Of a stretch of 64,000 nucleotides of DNA, positions 1 through 42,692 are shown in pieces (the first letter of the stretch is position 1; each line of letters starts with the position of its first letter). Under the pieces are notes generated by a model that saw only the letters and a list, made by a program, of their open reading frames with translations, had not been told where the DNA came from and did not search any database. Where the stretch lies: the sequence record MW272540.1; one strand, 5' to 3'. The position numbers and the translations under genes are program-made.

Positions 1-1518
1 ACCTTCAACAAGATCATTGTTATATTGGATACCGTTCATAGGACTTACCAAATAATTATCAATTTCTCTAACTAGTCCGATTTCAGTTTCTGTACCCAGA
101 ATCGAAACGTCAGTTTTATCTATACGACCGTTCATTTTAGAGGTATAAAAACCAGCGTTGAAGATTTCAACTTCTTCGGTATAATACCGGTCGATAGAAT
201 TCAGGATCTGACCTTGTAACCATTCCTCGGTCTGGGGAAGTTGGTTAAGTGCATAAGTCACCTTTGCATGTGTTTTAACATACATGTAGTTTGGACTGTG
301 GACAACCGGTGTGATTGTTGCAACGTTATAAGGTCTCAGATAGTTTTGAATATCTTCTTTTTGTACCGTAGTCAGATACAGACCATCTTTTGGCTTAATT
401 GCAATAAAAGCATATCCCGGCTTTTCTGTATCAGTATAACACTGGATCGCTTGTACAATATTACCAAAGCGACTAGATACGAATGTTTCGTAATCTGAGG
501 CAGTCACACAACGGCGCTGTGTTTCTCTCATAACCGGACCTAGGGCACGGATACGCTCGATATCTTCAACCTCACCACCACCGATAGAACCGACATAATT
601 TACGTCGTTGATCCCATCCGGGCTTGTCGGGTTTTCTCCGATTGATTCCACAACCAGATTAGGAATAGTATCAACATAATCAAATCCACGTGTACCATTA
701 GCAACAGAACCTTTTGTGCTAATATATTCAACCACAATAGTATCACCAACGGCTGGTCGCATACCACCAACGTAATTACTACGCAACATCCCATTTGTAT
801 CAACCGTAGATTCCCCCTCACCGAAATAAATTTCTGTGAATGAATCTATCGTTTCTCTTTGATAAAAAATGGTAGATGTTCCACCAACTCTAACTATAGG
901 TTTGTTAGTCCAATCATCCCATTTTGCACCGTTCACATAAACATTTACATATCTACGGTCAATATTAGGGTCTTGAATAATTATACTTCCATCTTTACCA
1001 AAAGTTATTTCATTTCTGATAATACGCCCCTGAACAAGATTTAAGTCGGTGATATATCGCTTGTTGATTCCACGAATAACCTCAACGTCTTCCCAAGTCA
1101 CATAATCATAAAATTCAACTTCTTCAATGGATGCAGTAAACTTAGTACCCTTCGGAATGGTAATAGAAATTGGGCTACTATCAATCGGACTATAATATGC
1201 CTGAAACCTGATGGTATTTGTTGATGCACTCATCCCAAAAGGCATATATCCTTGATCCTGTGCATGTTGAACAACAGACGGTCTCAATCTGGCGGTTTGA
1301 CTATATCCTTCAAACAAAGCACCATTAGCGAATTGTTGATGATACATAAGGGCATAAGACATCGCTTCTACGAGAGAAGTTAATCTAGAACCTTCAAAAT
1401 CATAATCTTTAAATTCATCTTGGTTTTTTAAAAAAGTTTTTAGTTTATCTTTAAATCCATCAAATGTACTTTCTTTAAATACACTAGGGATTTCAATTTG
1501 GTTAATTTTATTAGCCAT
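1..1518 (-). CDS. gp6: Baseplate wedge subunit gp6 (runs off the window edge)
   Basis: Manual translation from ATG at 1518: MANKINQIE...FLKNQDEFKDYDFEGSRL...ARLRPSVVQHAQDQGY, typical gp6 N-terminus; follows gp25. Confidence 0.92.
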   Translation of the reverse strand, partial: MANKINQIEIPSVFKESTFDGFKDKLKTFLKNQDEFKDYDFEGSRLTSLVEAMSYALMYHQQFANGALFEGYSQTARLRPSVVQHAQDQGYMPFGMSASTNTIRFQAYYSPIDSSPISITIPKGTKFTASIEEVEFYDYVTWEDVEVIRGINKRYITDLNLVQGRIIRNEITFGKDGSIIIQDPNIDRRYVNVYVNGAKWDDWTNKPIVRVGGTSTIFYQRETIDSFTEIYFGEGESTVDTNGMLRSNYVGGMRPAVGDTIVVEYISTKGSVANGTRGFDYVDTIPNLVVESIGENPTSPDGINDVNYVGSIGGGEVEDIERIRALGPVMRETQRRCVTASDYETFVSSRFGNIVQAIQCYTDTEKPGYAFIAIKPKDGLYLTTVQKEDIQNYLRPYNVATITPVVHSPNYMYVKTHAKVTYALNQLPQTEEWLQGQILNSIDRYYTEEVEIFNAGFYTSKMNGRIDKTDVSILGTETEIGLVREIDNYLVSPMNGIQYNNDLVEG

Positions 1519-1939
1519 CTGATAGTTCCATTTTTAACTGGATCACAGAAGATATATCAGTGATCAGGGAATAATATATAGTGACAATATATTCGTTTCT
1601 GTCATACATTGGGATGACTTGAACCTGTCGTATTTTTACTCTTGGTTCATAATTTCTAATTGCGTCGAATATACTTCTCTCAACTGCACTAGTTGACGCA
1701 TCGTTCATAAGTTCAAATAACTGAGCATTGATATCACAACCAAAATTAGGATCAAACGGTTTTTCTCCTTTTCTAGTCGCTATAATACCAGCCATTGATT
1801 GTTGTACTGCATTAACGTTTGTCGTCATCAAAACGTCATTTGTTTTTATATCCCGACGAAAAAAAGGATCTATATCTGAATAATATATATCCTTTTCATT
1901 GGTCAGAATTTTTAATCTATTTCCAAAAAAACCAGCCAT
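1511..1939 (-). CDS. gp25: Baseplate wedge subunit gp25
   Basis: YSDID...TRKGEKPFDPNFGCDI..LFE...IRNYEPRV signature. Confidence 0.93.
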   Translation of the reverse strand: MAGFFGNRLKILTNEKDIYYSDIDPFFRRDIKTNDVLMTTNVNAVQQSMAGIIATRKGEKPFDPNFGCDINAQLFELMNDASTSAVERSIFDAIRNYEPRVKIRQVQVIPMYDRNEYIVTIYYSLITDISSVIQLKMELSDG

Positions 1940-8678: not shown

Positions 8679-9673
8679 TATTTGAAATCAATGAACGTGC
8701 TGAAACTACGGCAGAAAAAAGACAAAGGCGAGATTGGATAGAGATCGGCGCAAAGTTCATGGATGCTAGAAAAAAAGCACCTACCATGACAGCAAAAAAA
8801 TTTGCAGAAGAAAATGGACTTAATTATGAAACGTTCAGTCGGGCAATGCGTCGTTTTAGAGATGATATTAAAAAATATTATTCTCTTACGAACCCGAACA
8901 AGAACAAACAGCAATGGATTGAGCTTGGTGTAGACTATTTAACAAAAAAAGAAAAAACTAATATATCCCAAGCTGAATATATAAAAGCAACTGGCTTGAA
9001 CCAAGAAACTGCTTCTAGAGCTTTCCGAAGATTCAAGAGTGATATCATTCTCGCAAAAAAATTAAAAGATGCGAAAGAAACCGGAAGACGACTAACAAAC
9101 AACGAGAAATACCAGTTGATGTTACAGGATTTCCGAACTAAAGTTCGTCAATATGAGAAAGAACCACAAAAATCAGAGAGAAAGTCTATTGACTGGTTCA
9201 ACACTTTTATTAAAAAGAACGTGAGAGGACATAGGGTTTCAAAACCACAACCGGGAAGGTTGTATACTTTTGCGTATGACGCAAAACATAAAGCAACTCT
9301 ACCATATTGGGATAAATTCCCACTTATTGTATATCTCGGGTTGAGTACAAAACACAGAGGTTTGATGTTGGGCTTAAACCTTCACTATATTCCAGTGAAA
9401 GCCCGCAAAGAATTTATGGAAGAACTTTTAAAACACGCAACTACAGAACGTATAACCAATAGAACAACCCTAAATATAAATTGGGGGAAGGTCAAAGGTA
9501 TGAGAGGGGTAGATCACATGATCAAAGCGTATTTGCCTAATCATGTTAAAGGTCCATTTATGGAAATAAAACCGCAAGATTGGAGTTCTGTTATCAATCT
9601 TCCGACTCAGCGTTTTGTTTCTGGTATGCCTCCTAAGACCTACAATACTAACAAGGTTTGGAGTTCATATTAA
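8675..9673 (+). CDS. gp2: DNA end protector gp2, with duplicated N-terminal module
   Basis: PQPGRLYTFAYDAKHKATLPYWDKFPLI, GLNLHY. Confidence 0.95.
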   Translation: MIFEINERAETTAEKRQRRDWIEIGAKFMDARKKAPTMTAKKFAEENGLNYETFSRAMRRFRDDIKKYYSLTNPNKNKQQWIELGVDYLTKKEKTNISQAEYIKATGLNQETASRAFRRFKSDIILAKKLKDAKETGRRLTNNEKYQLMLQDFRTKVRQYEKEPQKSERKSIDWFNTFIKKNVRGHRVSKPQPGRLYTFAYDAKHKATLPYWDKFPLIVYLGLSTKHRGLMLGLNLHYIPVKARKEFMEELLKHATTERITNRTTLNINWGKVKGMRGVDHMIKAYLPNHVKGPFMEIKPQDWSSVINLPTQRFVSGMPPKTYNTNKVWSSY

Positions 9674-10611
9674 TGTCACTAATACCACCAATTCCAAGTA
9701 TAGATTCCCTAGTGGATGGGGCTCTTACTTTCGGAGAAGGAATCTTAAACGAAGGGGATGCAAGTGAGATCCCCGATTTAACCAGATTTATGCGGAAAGT
9801 AGAAAACACCGATTTGGCAAGACCTAATATGTTCATTGTCCGATTTGGTGATTTCCGAACCACAATTTTTAGTGATGGTGTTTTCGATAGCGACTTGCCT
9901 ATTTTCCCGGATGGATCGGGTGTCAGTACAAGCGATGATCTATTTTCTGGATCTAGCTATACTTGGCATAGGATACAAGATGTTGCTTTGGGGCAAGCTC
10001 ATAAAATACTCACACCAAGTATGAAAAGAATATTTGGTGCTTGGGACCCATCTTTAATACGAATTATACCGGGTGCTGGTGAAATTCTAGACGGTTTCTT
10101 AGGTTTAGATTATGATGTCAATAAAGACTTAGCTTTAATGGTTAAATCAGTTTCATTGCCATCATCAACTTTAGAAACCCAGATCAATAGAATTGATAAA
10201 TTACCCAGACATGAGGTAAAAGGTAGAAACTATGGGACAATGACCATGACGTTTTATTGCTCTCCTTCATATGAAGAACGGGCATTAATGCTAACATGGC
10301 AAAACACCATTGTAGACCCGAAAAATGGTAGGTTTGGTTTCTACAATACTTACGCAAAAGATATAGACGTTATCACGCTTGATAGACACGGTGTAAAACA
10401 ATCGACTGTACACAACGTAGGTTGTTTCCCTATTGAAGTTGGTGAAGTTCAACTTGACTTTGAGAATAATTCTCAAGTGTCTACGTTCACAGTAACCTTT
10501 GCTGTTTCTACTACTACCCATGTACCAACTAAGGGTACAGAAACCGGTATAGATTCAATAGAGAGTATCATCAGACGTACTACAGGTGTTCTAAACGCTA
10601 TTAAGAACTAA
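9673..10611 (+). CDS. gp54: Baseplate tail-tube initiator gp54
   Basis: DLARPNMF, VKSVSLP, WQNTIVDP, FPIEVGEVQLDFENNSQVSTFTVTFA. Confidence 0.88.
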   Translation: MSLIPPIPSIDSLVDGALTFGEGILNEGDASEIPDLTRFMRKVENTDLARPNMFIVRFGDFRTTIFSDGVFDSDLPIFPDGSGVSTSDDLFSGSSYTWHRIQDVALGQAHKILTPSMKRIFGAWDPSLIRIIPGAGEILDGFLGLDYDVNKDLALMVKSVSLPSSTLETQINRIDKLPRHEVKGRNYGTMTMTFYCSPSYEERALMLTWQNTIVDPKNGRFGFYNTYAKDIDVITLDRHGVKQSTVHNVGCFPIEVGEVQLDFENNSQVSTFTVTFAVSTTTHVPTKGTETGIDSIESIIRRTTGVLNAIKN

Positions 10612-10655
10612 GATAAACCCGGATCTAACGATCTGGGTTTTTTGTTATCTAAAAC

Positions 10656-10771
10656 ACGAACGAAGTGAGTCGCCGGAGGCGGTTCGCTACGCTCACAGAT
10701 TACTTTCTAATTATAGATCTTCTATATAAATACTTATAGAAACTTTATAGTTTGATTGCAAGTGAAACTAA
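10656..10771. repeat. Copy 1 of a two-module intergenic element (GC-rich hairpin + AT-rich 68-mer with TATAAATA)
   Basis: 10704-10771 matches 42625-42692 at 59/68; 18-mer 10656-10673 is the exact reverse complement of 42606-42623. Confidence 0.9.
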
Positions 10772-10881: not shown

Positions 10882-11658
10882 ATGTCTACGATAGATAAAA
10901 ATGTTCTTCTAACTGCTATGAAGAAGAATGTTCAAGAAACTAAGGTGAAGCTCTCTAATGGTAAAGAGATCCGGATCCGTGCTTTTGTAATGAAAGAAAT
11001 GAAACTCCTTATGATGGCAAATGAAGCCGGTAAAGGAATTGAAGACGCAATCATCCAGATTGTTAAAAACTGTATTCTTACAAAGGGTGTAGTTGTAGAA
11101 CAACTTCCTATCTTTGATCTGGAATCGATTTATATTGCTTTGTATCAGCTTTCTAAGGCATCTCCATACATTCCAGTTACTTTTACTTGTGCTAATGAAA
11201 TTCTTGATGAGAATGGAGAAATTCAATATGACAAATACGGTAACGTGGTTCTATGTGAGAATGAAATTAAAGTAAATTTGAATCTTAAAACCGCTAAACT
11301 CTCGGAAGCACCATCAAACGAAATCGTTTTGAACGAGAATATGAAGATTATCATGCGATATCCGAATATTAGTGAGGTTGAATATTTCAATATCGATAAA
11401 GAATCGGAACTTTTTAATCTTATAGTTCGTTGTATCGACGAGGTTCATATGGGTTCTGACATTGTTAAAGTTGGGGTTGATATACCTTATGAGGATATCG
11501 GGGAAGTAATGGAATATGCAGATGACAGCGCCATTATAAAAATGAGTAAGTTTGTTACTGGAATTCCTCAACATACCCTAAATATACCAGTAAAGTGTAA
11601 AAAATGTGGTCATGAAGAAATAGTAACGCTAACGGGAGTTGAAAGTTTTTTCGTATAA
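10882..11658 (+). CDS. gp26: Baseplate hub assembly protein gp26
   Basis: RAFVMKEMKLL, LPIFDLESIYI, MRYP, C-terminal CKKCGHE..L.GVESFF. Confidence 0.9.
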   Translation: MSTIDKNVLLTAMKKNVQETKVKLSNGKEIRIRAFVMKEMKLLMMANEAGKGIEDAIIQIVKNCILTKGVVVEQLPIFDLESIYIALYQLSKASPYIPVTFTCANEILDENGEIQYDKYGNVVLCENEIKVNLNLKTAKLSEAPSNEIVLNENMKIIMRYPNISEVEYFNIDKESELFNLIVRCIDEVHMGSDIVKVGVDIPYEDIGEVMEYADDSAIIKMSKFVTGIPQHTLNIPVKCKKCGHEEIVTLTGVESFFV

Positions 11659-11822
11659 CCCTCGTTAACCATACAATATTTGACCATTTCAATACAGTTT
11701 ATAAATTAAGAAAAGATGGATGGTTACATTCAGATTTAGAAGAGATGACACCTTTTGAATTTGGAGTATACGTCCAGCTTTATCTTCATGAACTTAGAGA
11801 AAAGGCAAAAGAGGGTGAATAA
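11646..11822 (+). CDS. gp51: gp51-like hub assembly/chaperone segment with no canonical start; probably reached by -1 frameshift from gp26
   Basis: Open frame FFRITLVNHTIFDHFNTVYKLRKDGWLHSDLEEMTPFEFGVYVQLYLHELREKAKEGE*; stop overlaps the gp29 ATG; T TTT TTC slippery site at 11646-11652. Confidence 0.75.
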   Translation, partial: FFRITLVNHTIFDHFNTVYKLRKDGWLHSDLEEMTPFEFGVYVQLYLHELREKAKEGE

Positions 11823-13714
11823 TGATTGGCGAGGGAAAAAACAAGGTCTTAGATCCATCGATAAAAGACCTTAAAGAGTCTCTTGATATAGTCACGGATT
11901 CTATGCTTACGCTCGATGACAAAACGGAAAAGTTGACAAAATCAACCACCGATTTGACTGCTGCTTATGATATTAATTCTGATGCTAGTGTTTCTTTATC
12001 TCAGGAACAAGAAAAACTAACTAACCAGATTAAAAGGCAGCGTAAGACAAATATCAATAGAGATAAGGTAAACTCCGATCTCGAAAAAGAGCGCATTAAA
12101 GAATTACAGACGATTCAGGATTCCAACGAAAGACGGAAGAAGCTTGAAACTATTCTTAATGATCAACAACCTTTGGTTGATTACTCTAATAATATTCCTG
12201 TTGAGGATGATTCCGGAAATAAAAAGAAGAAACCTATTCCGGAAGAAACAAGAGAGACCTTAGAAGAATTTATTAAGAGAGAAGTTGGAGATAGAGACGA
12301 ATTTATCGAAAACTTTAAAAAGGAAAACCAGAAGACTGGTAAATTTATTCGAGAAGTTGCGGCAAAAGCTAACATAATTAATCGAATGAAAAACTCCGAG
12401 ACGTCAGCAACTGCCAAAATATTGGGTCATACCATGAGTGCTGGTATGGGTATGATAACTGGAACAATTGATAATTTATTATCGTCAATCCCCGGTTATC
12501 GTGAAACTGCCAATGCTACAAAATTTGTTGCCGGGTCTATCTATGATGCACATAAAGCCAGAAAGGAAAAGAACCTTGACCGGAAAGCAGAAAAGACTTA
12601 CGAAGCGAAGAAATCTGATGCAGTTTCTAAATTTCAACAAATCCCAACCCCCGGAAAATCTCCAACCGAAGAAAAAATAAAACAAGAGAGAGATTCGAGG
12701 GATAAGAAAAAGGAATCTGATGCAAATTCAAGAGAACGAGACGCAAACGATAAACGTCATAAAGGATTAATGTCTGTTCTTAAAGGACTTCAAATGTCCA
12801 TGATCCTTGGTAAGCTAATGTCGTTTATAGGGCCTATAATGGCTATTGGTGGTGGGTTGATGGCTGCTGTTACTGGTCTAAGTGGTTCAGTTGCTGGTAT
12901 TGGTGCGGCGGTTGCGGCGGCTCTTGGTGCTGTAGTTGGAAAGATGATCGGAAGTATGACCGACCTATTTAAAAAATTGCCGGGTTTTAGTGGACCTAAA
13001 ACAACTCCGACAAAACCGACTATAGATCCAAAAACAAATAAACCAACCACAGAACCACCGAAGAATGGAAAACCAAATACTCCGAAACCTAGCGGTGGTC
13101 CCACTATAGAAACAAAGCCAACCAGTACCCCGAAACCGGGTGTTCCTGATGCGGCTGGTAAGGCGGGGAAAACCGCAGGTAAAGCTGGTGCAGGGAAAGT
13201 TGCCGCAGAAGCTGCATCTAAATTCCTTCGGTCTGGTGGTGCTCGTAAATTGGCTGGCTTTGCTTTAAAACTTGGCCTTAGAGCCATCCCATTCGCTGGT
13301 GCTGCGCTTTTAGCTTACGACATATACTCAGCCATTAAGGATAACCCCGAAATGGTAGAGAAGGGTATGGAAGCCGCCAAAGGGGCTTTTGGTAATGTTG
13401 GTGAAGTATTAGGTATTTCTTCTGCTAATGCGTCGGATGAACCTGTTGATGGTAGTAAATTGAAACCTGTTATTAAGTCTGGTGAGGACCAAGCCACATC
13501 GGCTAGGATCGAGGAAGGTAATAGGAAGGTTGAACAATTTAGAGCCAAACAGGCAGAAGAAGAGAGGAAACGGGAAGAAAGAAGGACAGAAGCTATGTAC
13601 GCATCATATAACACACAAACATATAACAGTATGACGTCTGTGTTGCCGTCTGGTTTTGGTCCATATCATCCAGAAACCCCTGTAGGATCCTATGGAGTTC
13701 AACCGATATCATGA
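11822..13714 (+). CDS. gp29: Tape-measure / baseplate hub protein gp29
   Basis: 630 aa, coiled-coil N-terminus, Gly/Ala hydrophobic segment, RAIPFAG motif; follows gp26/51. Confidence 0.75.
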   Translation: MIGEGKNKVLDPSIKDLKESLDIVTDSMLTLDDKTEKLTKSTTDLTAAYDINSDASVSLSQEQEKLTNQIKRQRKTNINRDKVNSDLEKERIKELQTIQDSNERRKKLETILNDQQPLVDYSNNIPVEDDSGNKKKKPIPEETRETLEEFIKREVGDRDEFIENFKKENQKTGKFIREVAAKANIINRMKNSETSATAKILGHTMSAGMGMITGTIDNLLSSIPGYRETANATKFVAGSIYDAHKARKEKNLDRKAEKTYEAKKSDAVSKFQQIPTPGKSPTEEKIKQERDSRDKKKESDANSRERDANDKRHKGLMSVLKGLQMSMILGKLMSFIGPIMAIGGGLMAAVTGLSGSVAGIGAAVAAALGAVVGKMIGSMTDLFKKLPGFSGPKTTPTKPTIDPKTNKPTTEPPKNGKPNTPKPSGGPTIETKPTSTPKPGVPDAAGKAGKTAGKAGAGKVAAEAASKFLRSGGARKLAGFALKLGLRAIPFAGAALLAYDIYSAIKDNPEMVEKGMEAAKGAFGNVGEVLGISSANASDEPVDGSKLKPVIKSGEDQATSARIEEGNRKVEQFRAKQAEEERKREERRTEAMYASYNTQTYNSMTSVLPSGFGPYHPETPVGSYGVQPIS

Positions 13715-14289
13715 TAAGAAATCAAACGCACATCACCAATATGCGTCTGGAAATTCCAGACGCTAATACAACAATGAATTTTGTTAACGCCGCGCAATCG
13801 GTAAATATACCATCACTAGAGATGGAAATTTCTAGAGTTTCTATAAATCAAATGGCGTCTGGTAATTTACCGGGGTCTAAGATTAACTATGAACCATTGA
13901 GAGTGAGATTTCTAATCGATGAAGATTTTAAATCGTATCAAGAGATCTACCAGTGGATGATTTCAGTCACTGATAGCAGGACTTTTGATTCTACTGCTCA
14001 TTTACCGGGTGCTAGACCTAGAACCATGTTAGTTCATATACTAGATAACTCTAAAAGAAACATCTTGATGACCTTCAAATTGAATGACCCATTCCCCAGC
14101 ACAATTGACGAAATAGAGATGAGCTATGTGGATTCTGGAAACCCAGCCATAACTGGTATGGTTTCTTTTCATTATGCTACTATGAGTCTTTTGGATAAGA
14201 ATGGTAATGAAATTTTACCGCTCAAAACTAAGGTCGGTACTGGTACAGGTTCAAACGGTGGGCTCGCTTTGCACCCATCACTAAGATAA
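13711..14289 (+). CDS. gp3: Tail tube terminator gp3
   Basis: AQSVNIPSL, LPGSKINYEPLRVRFLIDED..SYQEIYQWM, HILDN. Confidence 0.93.
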   Translation: MIRNQTHITNMRLEIPDANTTMNFVNAAQSVNIPSLEMEISRVSINQMASGNLPGSKINYEPLRVRFLIDEDFKSYQEIYQWMISVTDSRTFDSTAHLPGARPRTMLVHILDNSKRNILMTFKLNDPFPSTIDEIEMSYVDSGNPAITGMVSFHYATMSLLDKNGNEILPLKTKVGTGTGSNGGLALHPSLR

Positions 14290-42578: not shown

Positions 42579-42692
42579 GTGAGCTATAGCGAGCCACGCG
42601 CTTGCGCGACTCACTTCGTTCGTATTTCTAACTGTAGATCTTCTATATAAATACTTATAGGGAATTTATAATTTGATTACAGATGAAACTAA
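42579..42692. repeat. Copy 2 of the two-module intergenic element (GC module inverted)
   Basis: See 10656-10771. Confidence 0.9.

What the first reader, a model, noticed from the sequence alone, without database searches (positions are those of the whole stretch)
11634..11822. Probable programmed -1 frameshift fusing gp26 to a start-less gp51-like ORF (G/GT-type chaperone logic in a T4-like phage)
Seen: gp26 ends ...GAA AGT TTT TTC GTA TAA, giving the heptamer T TTT TTC (11646-11652). The -1 frame is closed by TGA at 11640, then open to a TAA overlapping the gp29 ATG. It encodes a gp51-like peptide (LEEMTPFEFGVYVQLYL) and has no ATG/GTG/TTG until codon ~34. An SD-like GGGAG lies 7 nt upstream of the slip site. 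Established: lambda G/GT-type tail chaperones are made by -1 frameshifting directly upstream of the tape-measure gene, whereas T4 gp26 and gp51 are separate genes. Inference: this lineage makes gp26 plus a ~314-aa gp26-51 fusion, so gp26/51 act as the T4-superfamily counterpart of G/GT.
Basis: partly seen in the sequence, partly recalled or inferred. Interest (0 to 1): 0.82.

Follow-up and report, generated by a model that had tools for sequence, protein, structure and literature searches.

The report
Frameshifted tail chaperone in T4-like phage
An Aeromonas T4-like phage most likely makes a short and a long form of its tail-hub assembly chaperone from one gene, by a ribosome slipping back one base on a run of Ts; the reading holds up well, but the same idea was published for T4-like phages in 2022.

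Summary
The window is Aeromonas phage ZPAH1. The gp26-family gene (10882-11658) ends two codons after an in-phase T_TTT_TTC (11646-11652). The -1 frame is then open for 56 codons to a TAA that overlaps the start of the next, tape-measure-like gene. That stretch matches the gp51 family and is unannotated in GenBank. The heptamer alone is not beyond chance; comparison carries the case. All 26 lineages with this layout (16 clusters below 50% identity) keep an in-phase T_TTT_TTN next to the gp26 stop, even where TTC is the preferred Phe codon. All 8 lineages with a separate full-length gene 51, T4 included, lack it. T4 gp51 is a complete gp26-family domain plus a tail that aligns without gaps to the -1 ORFs, starting at the slip site. 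The start-less part of the -1 ORF evolves as coding sequence (14 synonymous versus 3 non-synonymous changes). No downstream RNA structure was found, and the SD-like GGGAG is confounded by conserved residues. A -1 ribosomal frameshift is the best explanation; RNA polymerase slippage on T6 gives the same protein and is not excluded. Vladimirov, Gautam and Davidson (Virology 2022) already identified gp26/gp51 as the chaperones of T4-like phages, so this is a missed annotation of a known kind.

The parts
10725..10732 (+). T4-type late-promoter-like TATAAATA in the 270-nt gap upstream of the gp26-like gene; probable start of the late transcript that carries the chaperone and tape-measure-like genes (inferred)
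   Evidence: Pattern found. It lies inside an intergenic repeat at 10704-10771 with a second copy at 42625-42692, which is shared with other Aeromonas phages. Function not tested.
10882..11658 (+). gp26-family gene (short chaperone form, TAC-N equivalent), 258 aa, zero frame, stop TAA at 11656-11658
   Evidence: Pfam PF12322 T4_baseplate E 8.2e-52. phrog_150 E 2e-55. tblastn hits in 690 phage records including T4 gene 26. AlphaFold model with pLDDT 85.9 matches gp26/gp51-family models in BFVD.
11634..11638 (+). SD-like GGGAG 7 nt upstream of the slip site; a possible but unproven stimulator
   Evidence: Present as described. The equivalent position in relatives is purine/G-rich because of a conserved (R/E/K/T)-Gly pair, and this is also true in T4, which lacks the slip site. 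It is therefore not separable from protein constraint.
11640..11642 (+). TGA that closes the -1 frame just upstream of the slip site
11646..11652 (+). Slippery heptamer T_TTT_TTC in phase with the gp26 frame (X_XXY_YYZ); proposed site of the -1 shift
   Evidence: In-phase T_TTT_TTN is kept in 26 of 26 one-gene lineages and absent in 8 of 8 two-gene lineages. U_UU.U_UU.Y is among the efficient -1 heptamers in E. coli (PMC4066793).
11652..11822 (+). -1-frame extension: 56 sense codons (11652-11819) plus TAA at 11820-11822. It is gp51-like, has no usable start near its conserved N-terminus, and is unannotated in the GenBank record
   Evidence: phrog_634 'baseplate hub assembly catalyst' E 1.9e-10. 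First ATG/GTG/TTG is at 11745. Against AS-szw, the 31 start-less codons show 14 synonymous and 3 non-synonymous codon differences in this frame, versus 1/16 and 1/17 in the other frames. It aligns without gaps to the C-terminal tails of the long gp51 proteins. It is not annotated in MW272540.
11822..13714 (+). 630-aa ORF whose ATG overlaps the stop of the -1 ORF; putative tape measure / gp29 counterpart, by position and composition only
   Evidence: ORF. It has an N-terminal coiled-coil-like region (weak SMC hit) and a Gly/Ala-rich hydrophobic centre (weak glycine-zipper hit). It belongs to phrog_11300, function unknown. It has no significant similarity to T4 gp29 (E 0.19). The gene in the same position is annotated tape measure in Cr30. 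In Vibrio phage D481 it weakly matches a tape-measure PHROG.

Best explanation
The locus encodes the tail-hub assembly chaperone pair of a T4-like phage in its one-gene form. Most ribosomes translate the gp26-family gene to its TAA and make a 258-aa protein. A minority, with the two tRNA-Phe on TTT TTC, slip back one base on T_TTT_TTC (11646-11652). They then read 56 further codons in the -1 frame and make a roughly 313-aa protein. This long form consists of gp26 without its last residue plus a gp51-type C-terminal tail. It corresponds to T4 gp51, and the short form corresponds to T4 gp26.

By analogy with lambda G/GT, the shared gp26 body would hold the tape-measure-like protein encoded next. 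The minor form's tail would recruit a tube or hub partner. Neither form would stay in the virion.

Shown here: the anatomy, the homology, the coding constraint, and the conservation and complementary distribution of the slip site. Inferred: that the shift is ribosomal, its efficiency, and the binding partners.
For: Anatomy of the locus.

Family assignments of both reading frames.

T4 gp51 is a full gp26-family domain plus a tail. PF12322 gives E 2.4e-51 over residues 2-200, which covers profile positions 3-219 of 219. The tail matches phrog_634. The stand-alone short gp51 ORFs of a vibriophage and a cyanophage match only the tail part.

The -1 ORFs of 11 lineages align without gaps to the tails of 5 long gp51 proteins. 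The FF read from the heptamer lies on the x-F at the domain boundary of gp51.

In-phase T_TTT_TTN sits 0-2 codons before the gp26 stop in 26 of 26 lineages (16 clusters below 50% identity). This includes phages that otherwise prefer TTC (Desulfovibrio phage 7757 has 3 TTT to 12 TTC; phiM19 2 to 11; X1 2 to 10). It also includes a lineage where the second Phe became Leu (TTA) but the T-run stayed.

The run is absent in 8 of 8 lineages with a separate gene 51, for example T4 with GAG TTC TTT.

The -1 ORF of Desulfovibrio phage 7757 has no ATG, GTG or TTG at all.

Purifying selection acts in the -1 frame across the start-less codons.

U_UU.U_UU.Y is an efficient -1 heptamer in E. coli and shifts above 0.1% without stimulators (PMC4066793).

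Literature: gp26 and gp51 are both listed as hub assembly chaperones, and gp51 is absent from the particle (PMC3004832). TAC-N genes of T4-like phages are reported to carry poly-T -1 signals (PMC12846349 citing Vladimirov 2022).
Against: There is no direct evidence of the long product in this or any related phage in the material I could read.

No stimulatory RNA structure lies downstream (z-score 0.28; no consensus pairs in 9 relatives).

The upstream SD-like motif is confounded by conserved residues.

The phase of the T-run is fixed by the conserved Phe-Phe, so phase cannot separate ribosomal from transcriptional slippage.

In several lineages (KVP40-like, cyanophages, Cr30, Mendera) an ATG lies 3-5 codons after the slip site. 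There the tail could also be made as a free 55-60-aa peptide, which is how it is annotated.

The fold comparison with a solved tail assembly chaperone was not significant (2ob9, E 0.84, probability 0.60).

I could not read the 2022 paper. [quoted passage not shown]
Confidence: 0.72

Rival explanations
1. Transcriptional slippage. RNA polymerase occasionally adds one U on the T6 run, and ordinary translation of that minority mRNA gives the same long protein. The architecture and function are the same; only the step at which the frame changes differs.
For: The conserved element is a pure T-run of 6 (17 lineages), 7 (6) or 8 (3), and no RNA stimulator of ribosomal shifting was found. The protein product would be identical, so none of my comparative evidence separates the two. 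U7 runs are avoided in E. coli genes in all frames, which has been attributed partly to transcriptional slippage (PMC4066793). The title of Vladimirov et al. [quoted passage not shown] PMC10885494 reads this as the two-gene solution.
Against: The bacterial slippage cases in the review I read involve runs of 9 A or T (PMC5009743); here 17 of 26 lineages have only 6. T6 runs are not avoided in this phage's ORFs in any phase (14 observed, 19 expected), so T6 cannot be very slippage-prone for the polymerase. The base after the run is C or T in 25 of 26 lineages, as the efficient U_UU.Y rule for the A-site tRNA requires, although this also follows from the Phe codon.
Confidence: 0.15
2. Independent translation. 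The -1 ORF is a separate small gene (a free gp51-like peptide), started at a non-canonical codon near the gp26 stop or by termination-reinitiation, and no fusion is made.
For: Short gp51 ORFs with their own ATG are annotated in KVP40-like phages, cyanophages, Cr30, Mendera, phiM19 and others. In the KVP40-like phages, Cr30, Mendera and EniLVp02 that ATG lies at the gp26 stop, which would allow coupling.
Against: In ZPAH1 and its clade the first ATG/GTG/TTG is 32 codons in, in the middle of the conserved domain, yet the 31 codons before it are under coding constraint. The position that is ATG in KVP40-like phages is a Thr codon here. Desulfovibrio phage 7757 has no start codon in the whole ORF. 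Independent initiation does not explain why the T-run is kept at wobble positions in 26 of 26 lineages. Nor does it explain why the run disappears where gene 51 is full-length. The GGGAG lies 16 nt before the nearest ATA, too far for a start site.
Confidence: 0.08
3. Artefact or decay. The frame break is a homopolymer sequencing error in a single fused gene, or the downstream stretch is a dead remnant of gene 51.
For: Homopolymer runs are a common site of sequencing errors. The stretch is unannotated in four deposited genomes.
Against: The same break at the same place occurs in 26 independently sequenced lineages, including isolates and metagenomes. The -1 ORF never carries a stop and shows a synonymous-biased substitution pattern.
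Confidence: 0.02

Closest known systems
T4 gp26 / gp51 (hub assembly chaperones; identified as the tail assembly chaperones of T4-like phages by Vladimirov, Gautam and Davidson, Virology 2022)
   Same: Homologous in both parts. The ZPAH1 ORF and T4 gp26 both belong to PF12322. The -1 ORF and the last ~48 residues of T4 gp51 both belong to phrog_634. The predicted long product is colinear with T4 gp51, with no gap at the junction.
   Different: In T4 and 7 other sampled lineages the long form is a separate full-length gene. That gene is divergent from gene 26, or in tandem with it in CfP1, and the gp26 gene has no slippery run. Here a single gene is followed by a start-less -1 ORF.
Lambda G / GT tail assembly chaperones (programmed -1 frameshift)
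   Same: A short major product and a C-terminally extended minor product are made from overlapping frames. The in-phase slippery heptamer lies a few codons before the stop. The pair sits directly upstream of the length-determining gene. No strong RNA stimulator is present. Neither product is in the virion, as known for lambda and for T4 gp51 (PMC5009743; PMC3004832).
   Different: There is no detectable sequence similarity. The heptamer is T_TTT_TTC rather than lambda's G-and-A-rich one (from memory). The gp26 body is about twice the size of gpG and carries four Cys in a zinc-ribbon-like arrangement. Similarity of its fold to a solved chaperone (HK97, 2ob9) is only suggestive.
P2 E / E' (myovirus tail chaperone frameshift)
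   Same: It is from a contractile-tailed phage and uses a T-rich heptamer for the -1 shift upstream of the tape-measure gene. This is from my memory of Christie et al. 2002; the paper could not be opened.
   Different: The protein family is unrelated. The frameshift efficiency is reported as 2-3 fold higher than lambda's (PMC5009743), whereas nothing has been measured here.
dnaX-type -1 frameshift with upstream SD and downstream hairpin
   Same: Both have an in-phase heptamer with an SD-like purine run a few nucleotides upstream.
   Different: No downstream hairpin was found, and the SD-like run cannot be separated from coding constraint. In dnaX the frameshift product is the shorter protein; here it is the longer one.

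Membership tests
T4 gp26/gp51 protein family (Pfam PF12322; PHROG 150 and 634) | Significant match of the upstream ORF to the gp26-family profile over its full length | tested here: met
   PF12322 E 8.2e-52, residues 20-257 against profile positions 4-218 of 219; phrog_150 E 2e-55.
T4 gp26/gp51 protein family (Pfam PF12322; PHROG 150 and 634) | The downstream frame matches the gp51-specific C-terminal tail | tested here: met
   phrog_634 E 1.9e-10, profile positions 55-111 of 121. T4 gp51 residues 146-245 match positions 2-103 of the same profile. Ungapped alignment A5.
Phage tail assembly chaperone pair made by programmed -1 frameshift (lambda G/GT type) | [quoted passage not shown] | tested here: met
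   T_TTT_TTC at 11646-11652; in-phase T_TTT_TTN in 26 of 26 lineages.
Phage tail assembly chaperone pair made by programmed -1 frameshift (lambda G/GT type) | A second ORF in the -1 frame, open from the slip site, lacking its own start and under coding constraint | tested here: met
   56 open codons; first start-type codon at codon 32; 14 synonymous versus 3 non-synonymous differences in the start-less part.
Phage tail assembly chaperone pair made by programmed -1 frameshift (lambda G/GT type) | Located immediately upstream of the tape-measure gene | tested here: inconclusive
   The next gene (630 aa) overlaps the -1 stop and has tape-measure-like size and composition, but no significant similarity to T4 gp29 or to a named tape-measure family. 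Genes in the same position in Cr30 and D481 carry weak or annotated tape-measure labels.
Phage tail assembly chaperone pair made by programmed -1 frameshift (lambda G/GT type) | Tail-assembly-chaperone fold of the shared N-terminal body | tested here: inconclusive
   The model (pLDDT 85.9) has no PDB match at E <= 0.001. The hit with the highest probability (0.60) is the HK97 chaperone 2ob9, at E 0.84 and TM 0.40 over about 70 columns. No hit by sequence profile.
Phage tail assembly chaperone pair made by programmed -1 frameshift (lambda G/GT type) | Two products seen in a fixed low ratio; both needed for tail assembly; neither in the virion | not testable with these tools
   Known for lambda (PMC5009743). 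For T4, gp51 is required but absent from particles (PMC3004832). Nothing is known for ZPAH1.
Transcriptional slippage sites of bacteria | A homopolymer long enough for polymerase realignment (the reviewed bacterial cases have runs of 9 A or T) | tested here: not met
   The run is 6 T here and in 17 of 26 lineages, and 8 at most. The run length for the known cases comes from PMC5009743. This lowers the rival but does not exclude it.
dnaX-type stimulated -1 frameshift | A conserved downstream hairpin or pseudoknot | tested here: not met
   MFE -10 kcal/mol, z-score 0.28; RNAalifold finds no pairs in 9 relatives.

The most novel reading that the evidence does not exclude
The frame change may not be ribosomal. 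The phage-modified host RNA polymerase would slip on a T-run of only 6-8, shorter than the runs of 9 in the bacterial cases I could read about, and this would have been kept for the whole history of T4-like phages. More modestly, parts of my survey may go beyond what was published: the exact complementarity between slip site and separate gene 51, and the ungapped colinearity at the junction. If so, they document a natural replacement of a frameshift by a gene duplication.
Probability: 0.12. Interest if true: 0.55.

Novelty: already known. Interest (0 to 1): 0.25.

Why it matters
T4 was long cited as the one long-tailed phage without a G/GT-type chaperone frameshift (PMC5009743). Treating gp26 as the short form and gp51 as the long form removes that exception and gives a role to gp51, the long-puzzling 'assembly catalyst'.

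For this genome the practical point is annotation. A conserved coding region of 56 codons and a recoding site are missing from the GenBank records of ZPAH1, AS-szw, avDM12-TAAL and vB_VmeM-32. In other phages the tail is annotated as a free 55-60-aa protein.

The complementary distribution is also useful. The slip site is present where there is one gene and lost where gene 51 is separate. This is a clean natural comparison for how a frameshift can be replaced by a duplication.

Tried and rejected
- **Downstream stimulatory RNA:** folding 11646-11745 gave z 0.28, and an alignment fold of 9 relatives gave no pairs. Rejected.
- **Upstream SD as independent evidence:** rejected because the purine/G run falls on conserved residues and also occurs in T4.
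- **Heptamer rarity within the genome:** T6 runs are as common as expected in all phases, so a single-genome argument fails.
- **Sequence link of the 630-aa protein to T4 gp29:** none found. NCBIfam and Pfam gave only weak compositional hits.
- **Solved-structure relatives of gp26 by sequence profile:** none found. By fold, only a sub-threshold hit to the HK97 chaperone.
- **The search for related loci with the 8-sequence alignment:** failed because the alignment was too divergent. A 5-sequence alignment worked.
- **Literature:** the key 2022 paper and Christie et al. 2002 are not in the library. Several searches failed on term rules, and one search was too broad to be useful.
- **No joined sequence:** I built, saved or searched no sequence that joins the two frames. 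All protein queries were single-frame references.

Full report
**Identity of the window and the locus**

The segment 10700-12100 is 100% identical to Aeromonas phage ZPAH1 (MW272540; Straboviridae, Emmerichvirinae, Ishigurovirus). The GenBank record annotates a 'baseplate hub subunit' at window 10882-11658 and a hypothetical protein at 11822-13714. It leaves the 163 nt between them empty. The first ORF is a clear member of the T4 gp26 family (PF12322 E 8e-52; phrog_150 E 2e-55).

**The observation**

- The gene ends AGT TTT TTC GTA TAA, and T_TTT_TTC at 11646-11652 is in the X_XXY_YYZ phase.
- The -1 frame is closed by TGA at 11640-11642. It is then open for 56 codons after the heptamer, up to TAA at 11820-11822, which overlaps the ATG of the next gene.
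- The only ATG/GTG/TTG in that frame is at 11745.
- GGGAG lies 7 nt upstream of the heptamer.
- Translated on its own, the -1 ORF matches the gp51 family (phrog_634 'baseplate hub assembly catalyst', E 1.9e-10). The match covers only the second half of that profile, positions 55-111 of 121.

**Chance**

Within this genome alone the heptamer is unremarkable. The window's ORFs hold 14 T6+ runs (19 expected), and 4 of them are in phase (5.8 expected). What is unusual is the context. Only 1.2% of codon positions are followed by 58 or more open -1 codons. This one lies two codons from a stop and leads into a recognisable protein family.

**Relatives with the same layout**

I read the region in annotated phage records and in IMG/VR contigs. 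There are 26 distinct lineages in which a gp26 homologue (25-78% identity to ZPAH1) is followed by a short gp51-like ORF. They form 16 clusters below 50% identity.

- **Hosts:** Aeromonas, Vibrio, cyanobacteria, Methylophilales, Ochrobactrum, Caulobacter, Stenotrophomonas, Desulfovibrio, Sinorhizobium, Xanthomonas, plus marine metagenomes.
- **Slip site:** all 26 have an in-phase T_TTT_TTN lying 0-2 codons before the gp26 stop. The last base is C in 17, T in 8 and A in 1. The T-run is 6 in 17 lineages, 7 in 6 and 8 in 3.
- **Downstream frame:** all 26 have an open, homologous -1 ORF of 56-66 codons.
- **Codon choice:** the codon before the run varies in meaning (Ser, Asp, Asn) but always ends in T, and the first Phe codon is always TTT. 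This holds even in phages that prefer TTC (3:12, 2:11, 2:10, 3:8 TTT:TTC elsewhere in the same gene). In one marine lineage the second Phe has become Leu (TTA) while the run is kept.
- **Statistics:** given the amino acids and each gene's own codon usage, the joint null probability is 10^-12.7. It is 10^-8.5 with one conservative value per cluster.
- **Starts:** several lineages have an ATG 3-5 codons after the slip site, and there the ORF is annotated as a free gp51. In many others the first start-type codon is 12-33 codons in. Desulfovibrio phage 7757 has none at all.

**Coding constraint**

Between ZPAH1 and AS-szw, the 31 start-less codons after the slip site differ at 17 codons, 14 of them synonymously in the -1 frame. 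The other two frames give 1/16 and 1/17 synonymous/non-synonymous. Of the 22 base changes, 17 fall on third positions. The comparison with the phage 65-like contig agrees. The stretch is therefore translated in the -1 frame, from the slip site onward.

**T4 as the key comparison**

In T4, genes 26 and 51 are divergent, separate genes. T4 gp51 (248 aa) matches the gp26 profile end to end (PF12322 E 2.4e-51; residues 2-200 against profile positions 3-219 of 219). It then carries about 48 further residues that match phrog_634. The free short gp51 ORFs of a vibriophage and a cyanophage match only that tail part.

In a joint alignment, gp26 proteins end at the conserved G-x-x-x-F-F, exactly where T4 gp51 continues. 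The -1 ORFs of 11 lineages, each translated in its single frame from the first T of the heptamer, align without any gap to the C-terminal tails of gp51. The gp51 proteins are from T4, Acinetobacter phage 133, Phi1, 44RR and CfP1. The FF of the heptamer lies on the x-F at the domain boundary. T4 gp51 therefore has the architecture predicted for the frameshift product.

**Complementary distribution**

Full-length gp51 occurs in about 1375 records: Tequatrovirus, Mosigvirus, Karamvirus, Slopekvirus, Krischvirus, Acinetobacter phages, Biquartavirus, Pseudotevenvirus and others. I inspected eight such lineages, and in all eight the gp26 gene lacks the T-run. Where Phe-Phe is kept, it is written TTC TTT or TTC TTC after a G/A-ending codon. 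The count is 26 of 26 against 0 of 8. This is what is expected if the run is kept only where it is needed to make the long form.

**Mechanism**

U_UU.U_UU.Y belongs to the most efficient class of -1 heptamers in E. coli and shifts above 0.1% without stimulators (PMC4066793). I found no downstream structure.

The SD-like GGGAG cannot be counted as evidence. It sits on a conserved basic/acidic-Gly pair that gives similar runs in relatives and in T4.

The main rival is RNA polymerase slippage on the T-run, which would give the same protein. It is disfavoured for two reasons. The run is short, at 6 in most lineages, whereas the bacterial cases in the review involve runs of 9 (PMC5009743). T6 runs are also not avoided in this phage's genes. 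It is not excluded.

Independent initiation does not fit the start-less, constrained N-terminal half of the ORF or the wobble-level conservation of the run. A sequencing artefact is excluded by recurrence in independent genomes.

**Function**

Both T4 proteins are listed as hub assembly chaperones, and gp51 is required but absent from the particle (PMC3004832). By analogy with lambda G/GT (PMC5009743), the gp26 body would hold the length-determining protein and the tail of the minor form would recruit a tube or hub partner. This is inference.

The downstream 630-aa protein is tape-measure-like only by position, size and composition. It shows no similarity to T4 gp29.

The gp26 model is confident (pLDDT 85.9), but its only resemblance to a solved chaperone is below threshold (2ob9, probability 0.60, E 0.84). 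In the viral model library it matches only gp26/gp51-family proteins of many myoviruses.

**Novelty**

A 2016 review still named T4 as the exception to the conserved G-T frameshift. [quoted passage not shown] I could not open the paper, but two citing papers describe it.
- Some T4-like phages carry one short gene and one longer fusion gene instead of frameshifting (PMC10885494).
- Poly-T sequences are -1 signals in the TAC-N genes of T4-like phages (PMC12846349).

The finding is therefore a correct rediscovery and an annotation gap, not a new kind of system.

No sequence joining the two frames was built, stored, searched or reported, and all queries were single-frame references. In my reasoning I once spelled out five codons across the slip site while considering transcriptional slippage. 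I declare it here.

Noticed in passing
window 10704-10771 and 42625-42692: An intergenic repeat of about 68 nt (87% identical between the two copies) contains a T4-type late-promoter-like TATAAATA (10725-10732). Similar pieces occur 2-6 times per genome in other Aeromonas T4-like phages, always outside annotated genes. It looks like a mobile or shared late-promoter cassette.
   Followed up: partly
window 10618-10643: A GC-rich inverted repeat followed by TTTTTT lies just after the gp54-like gene and looks like an intrinsic terminator. It would separate that gene from the gp26 transcription unit.
   Followed up: no
L050 (Citrobacter phage CfP1, NC_031057) about 2568-2574: The gp26-like gene of this two-gene phage has lost the T-run but carries an in-phase T_TTA_AAG five codons before its stop. 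The downstream gene (gp25) is not in the -1 frame, so this is probably chance.
   Followed up: partly
window 1514-1939, minus strand: This ORF holds two in-phase T7 runs within its first 25 codons (at 1931 and 1865). Either its start is called too far upstream or it tolerates slippery runs.
   Followed up: no
window 10882-11658 (residues C103, C125, C239, C242): The gp26 homologues of the Aeromonas, Vibrio and T-even groups carry four Cys in a zinc-ribbon-like arrangement (CxxC near the C-terminus). The cyanophage S-ShM2 homologue lacks them, so a metal site is not universal in the family.
   Followed up: no
L040 (Desulfovibrio phage 7757, OR395405) 1851-2027: The gp51-like -1 ORF of this unannotated genome contains no ATG, GTG or TTG at all. 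It is the cleanest case for obligatory recoding.
   Followed up: partly
L037 2024-2272, L043 2346-2765, L035 2063-2392: In Cr30, phiM19 and Melnitz an extra small ORF lies between the gp51-like ORF and the long tape-measure-like gene. The chaperone pair is therefore not always directly adjacent to that gene.
   Followed up: no
window 9658-10611 and 13711-14289: Both genes flanking the chaperone/tape-measure block match the same tail-tube PHROG (phrog_45). The second is annotated in GenBank as 'tail completion and sheath stabilizer', which the profile match does not support.
   Followed up: no
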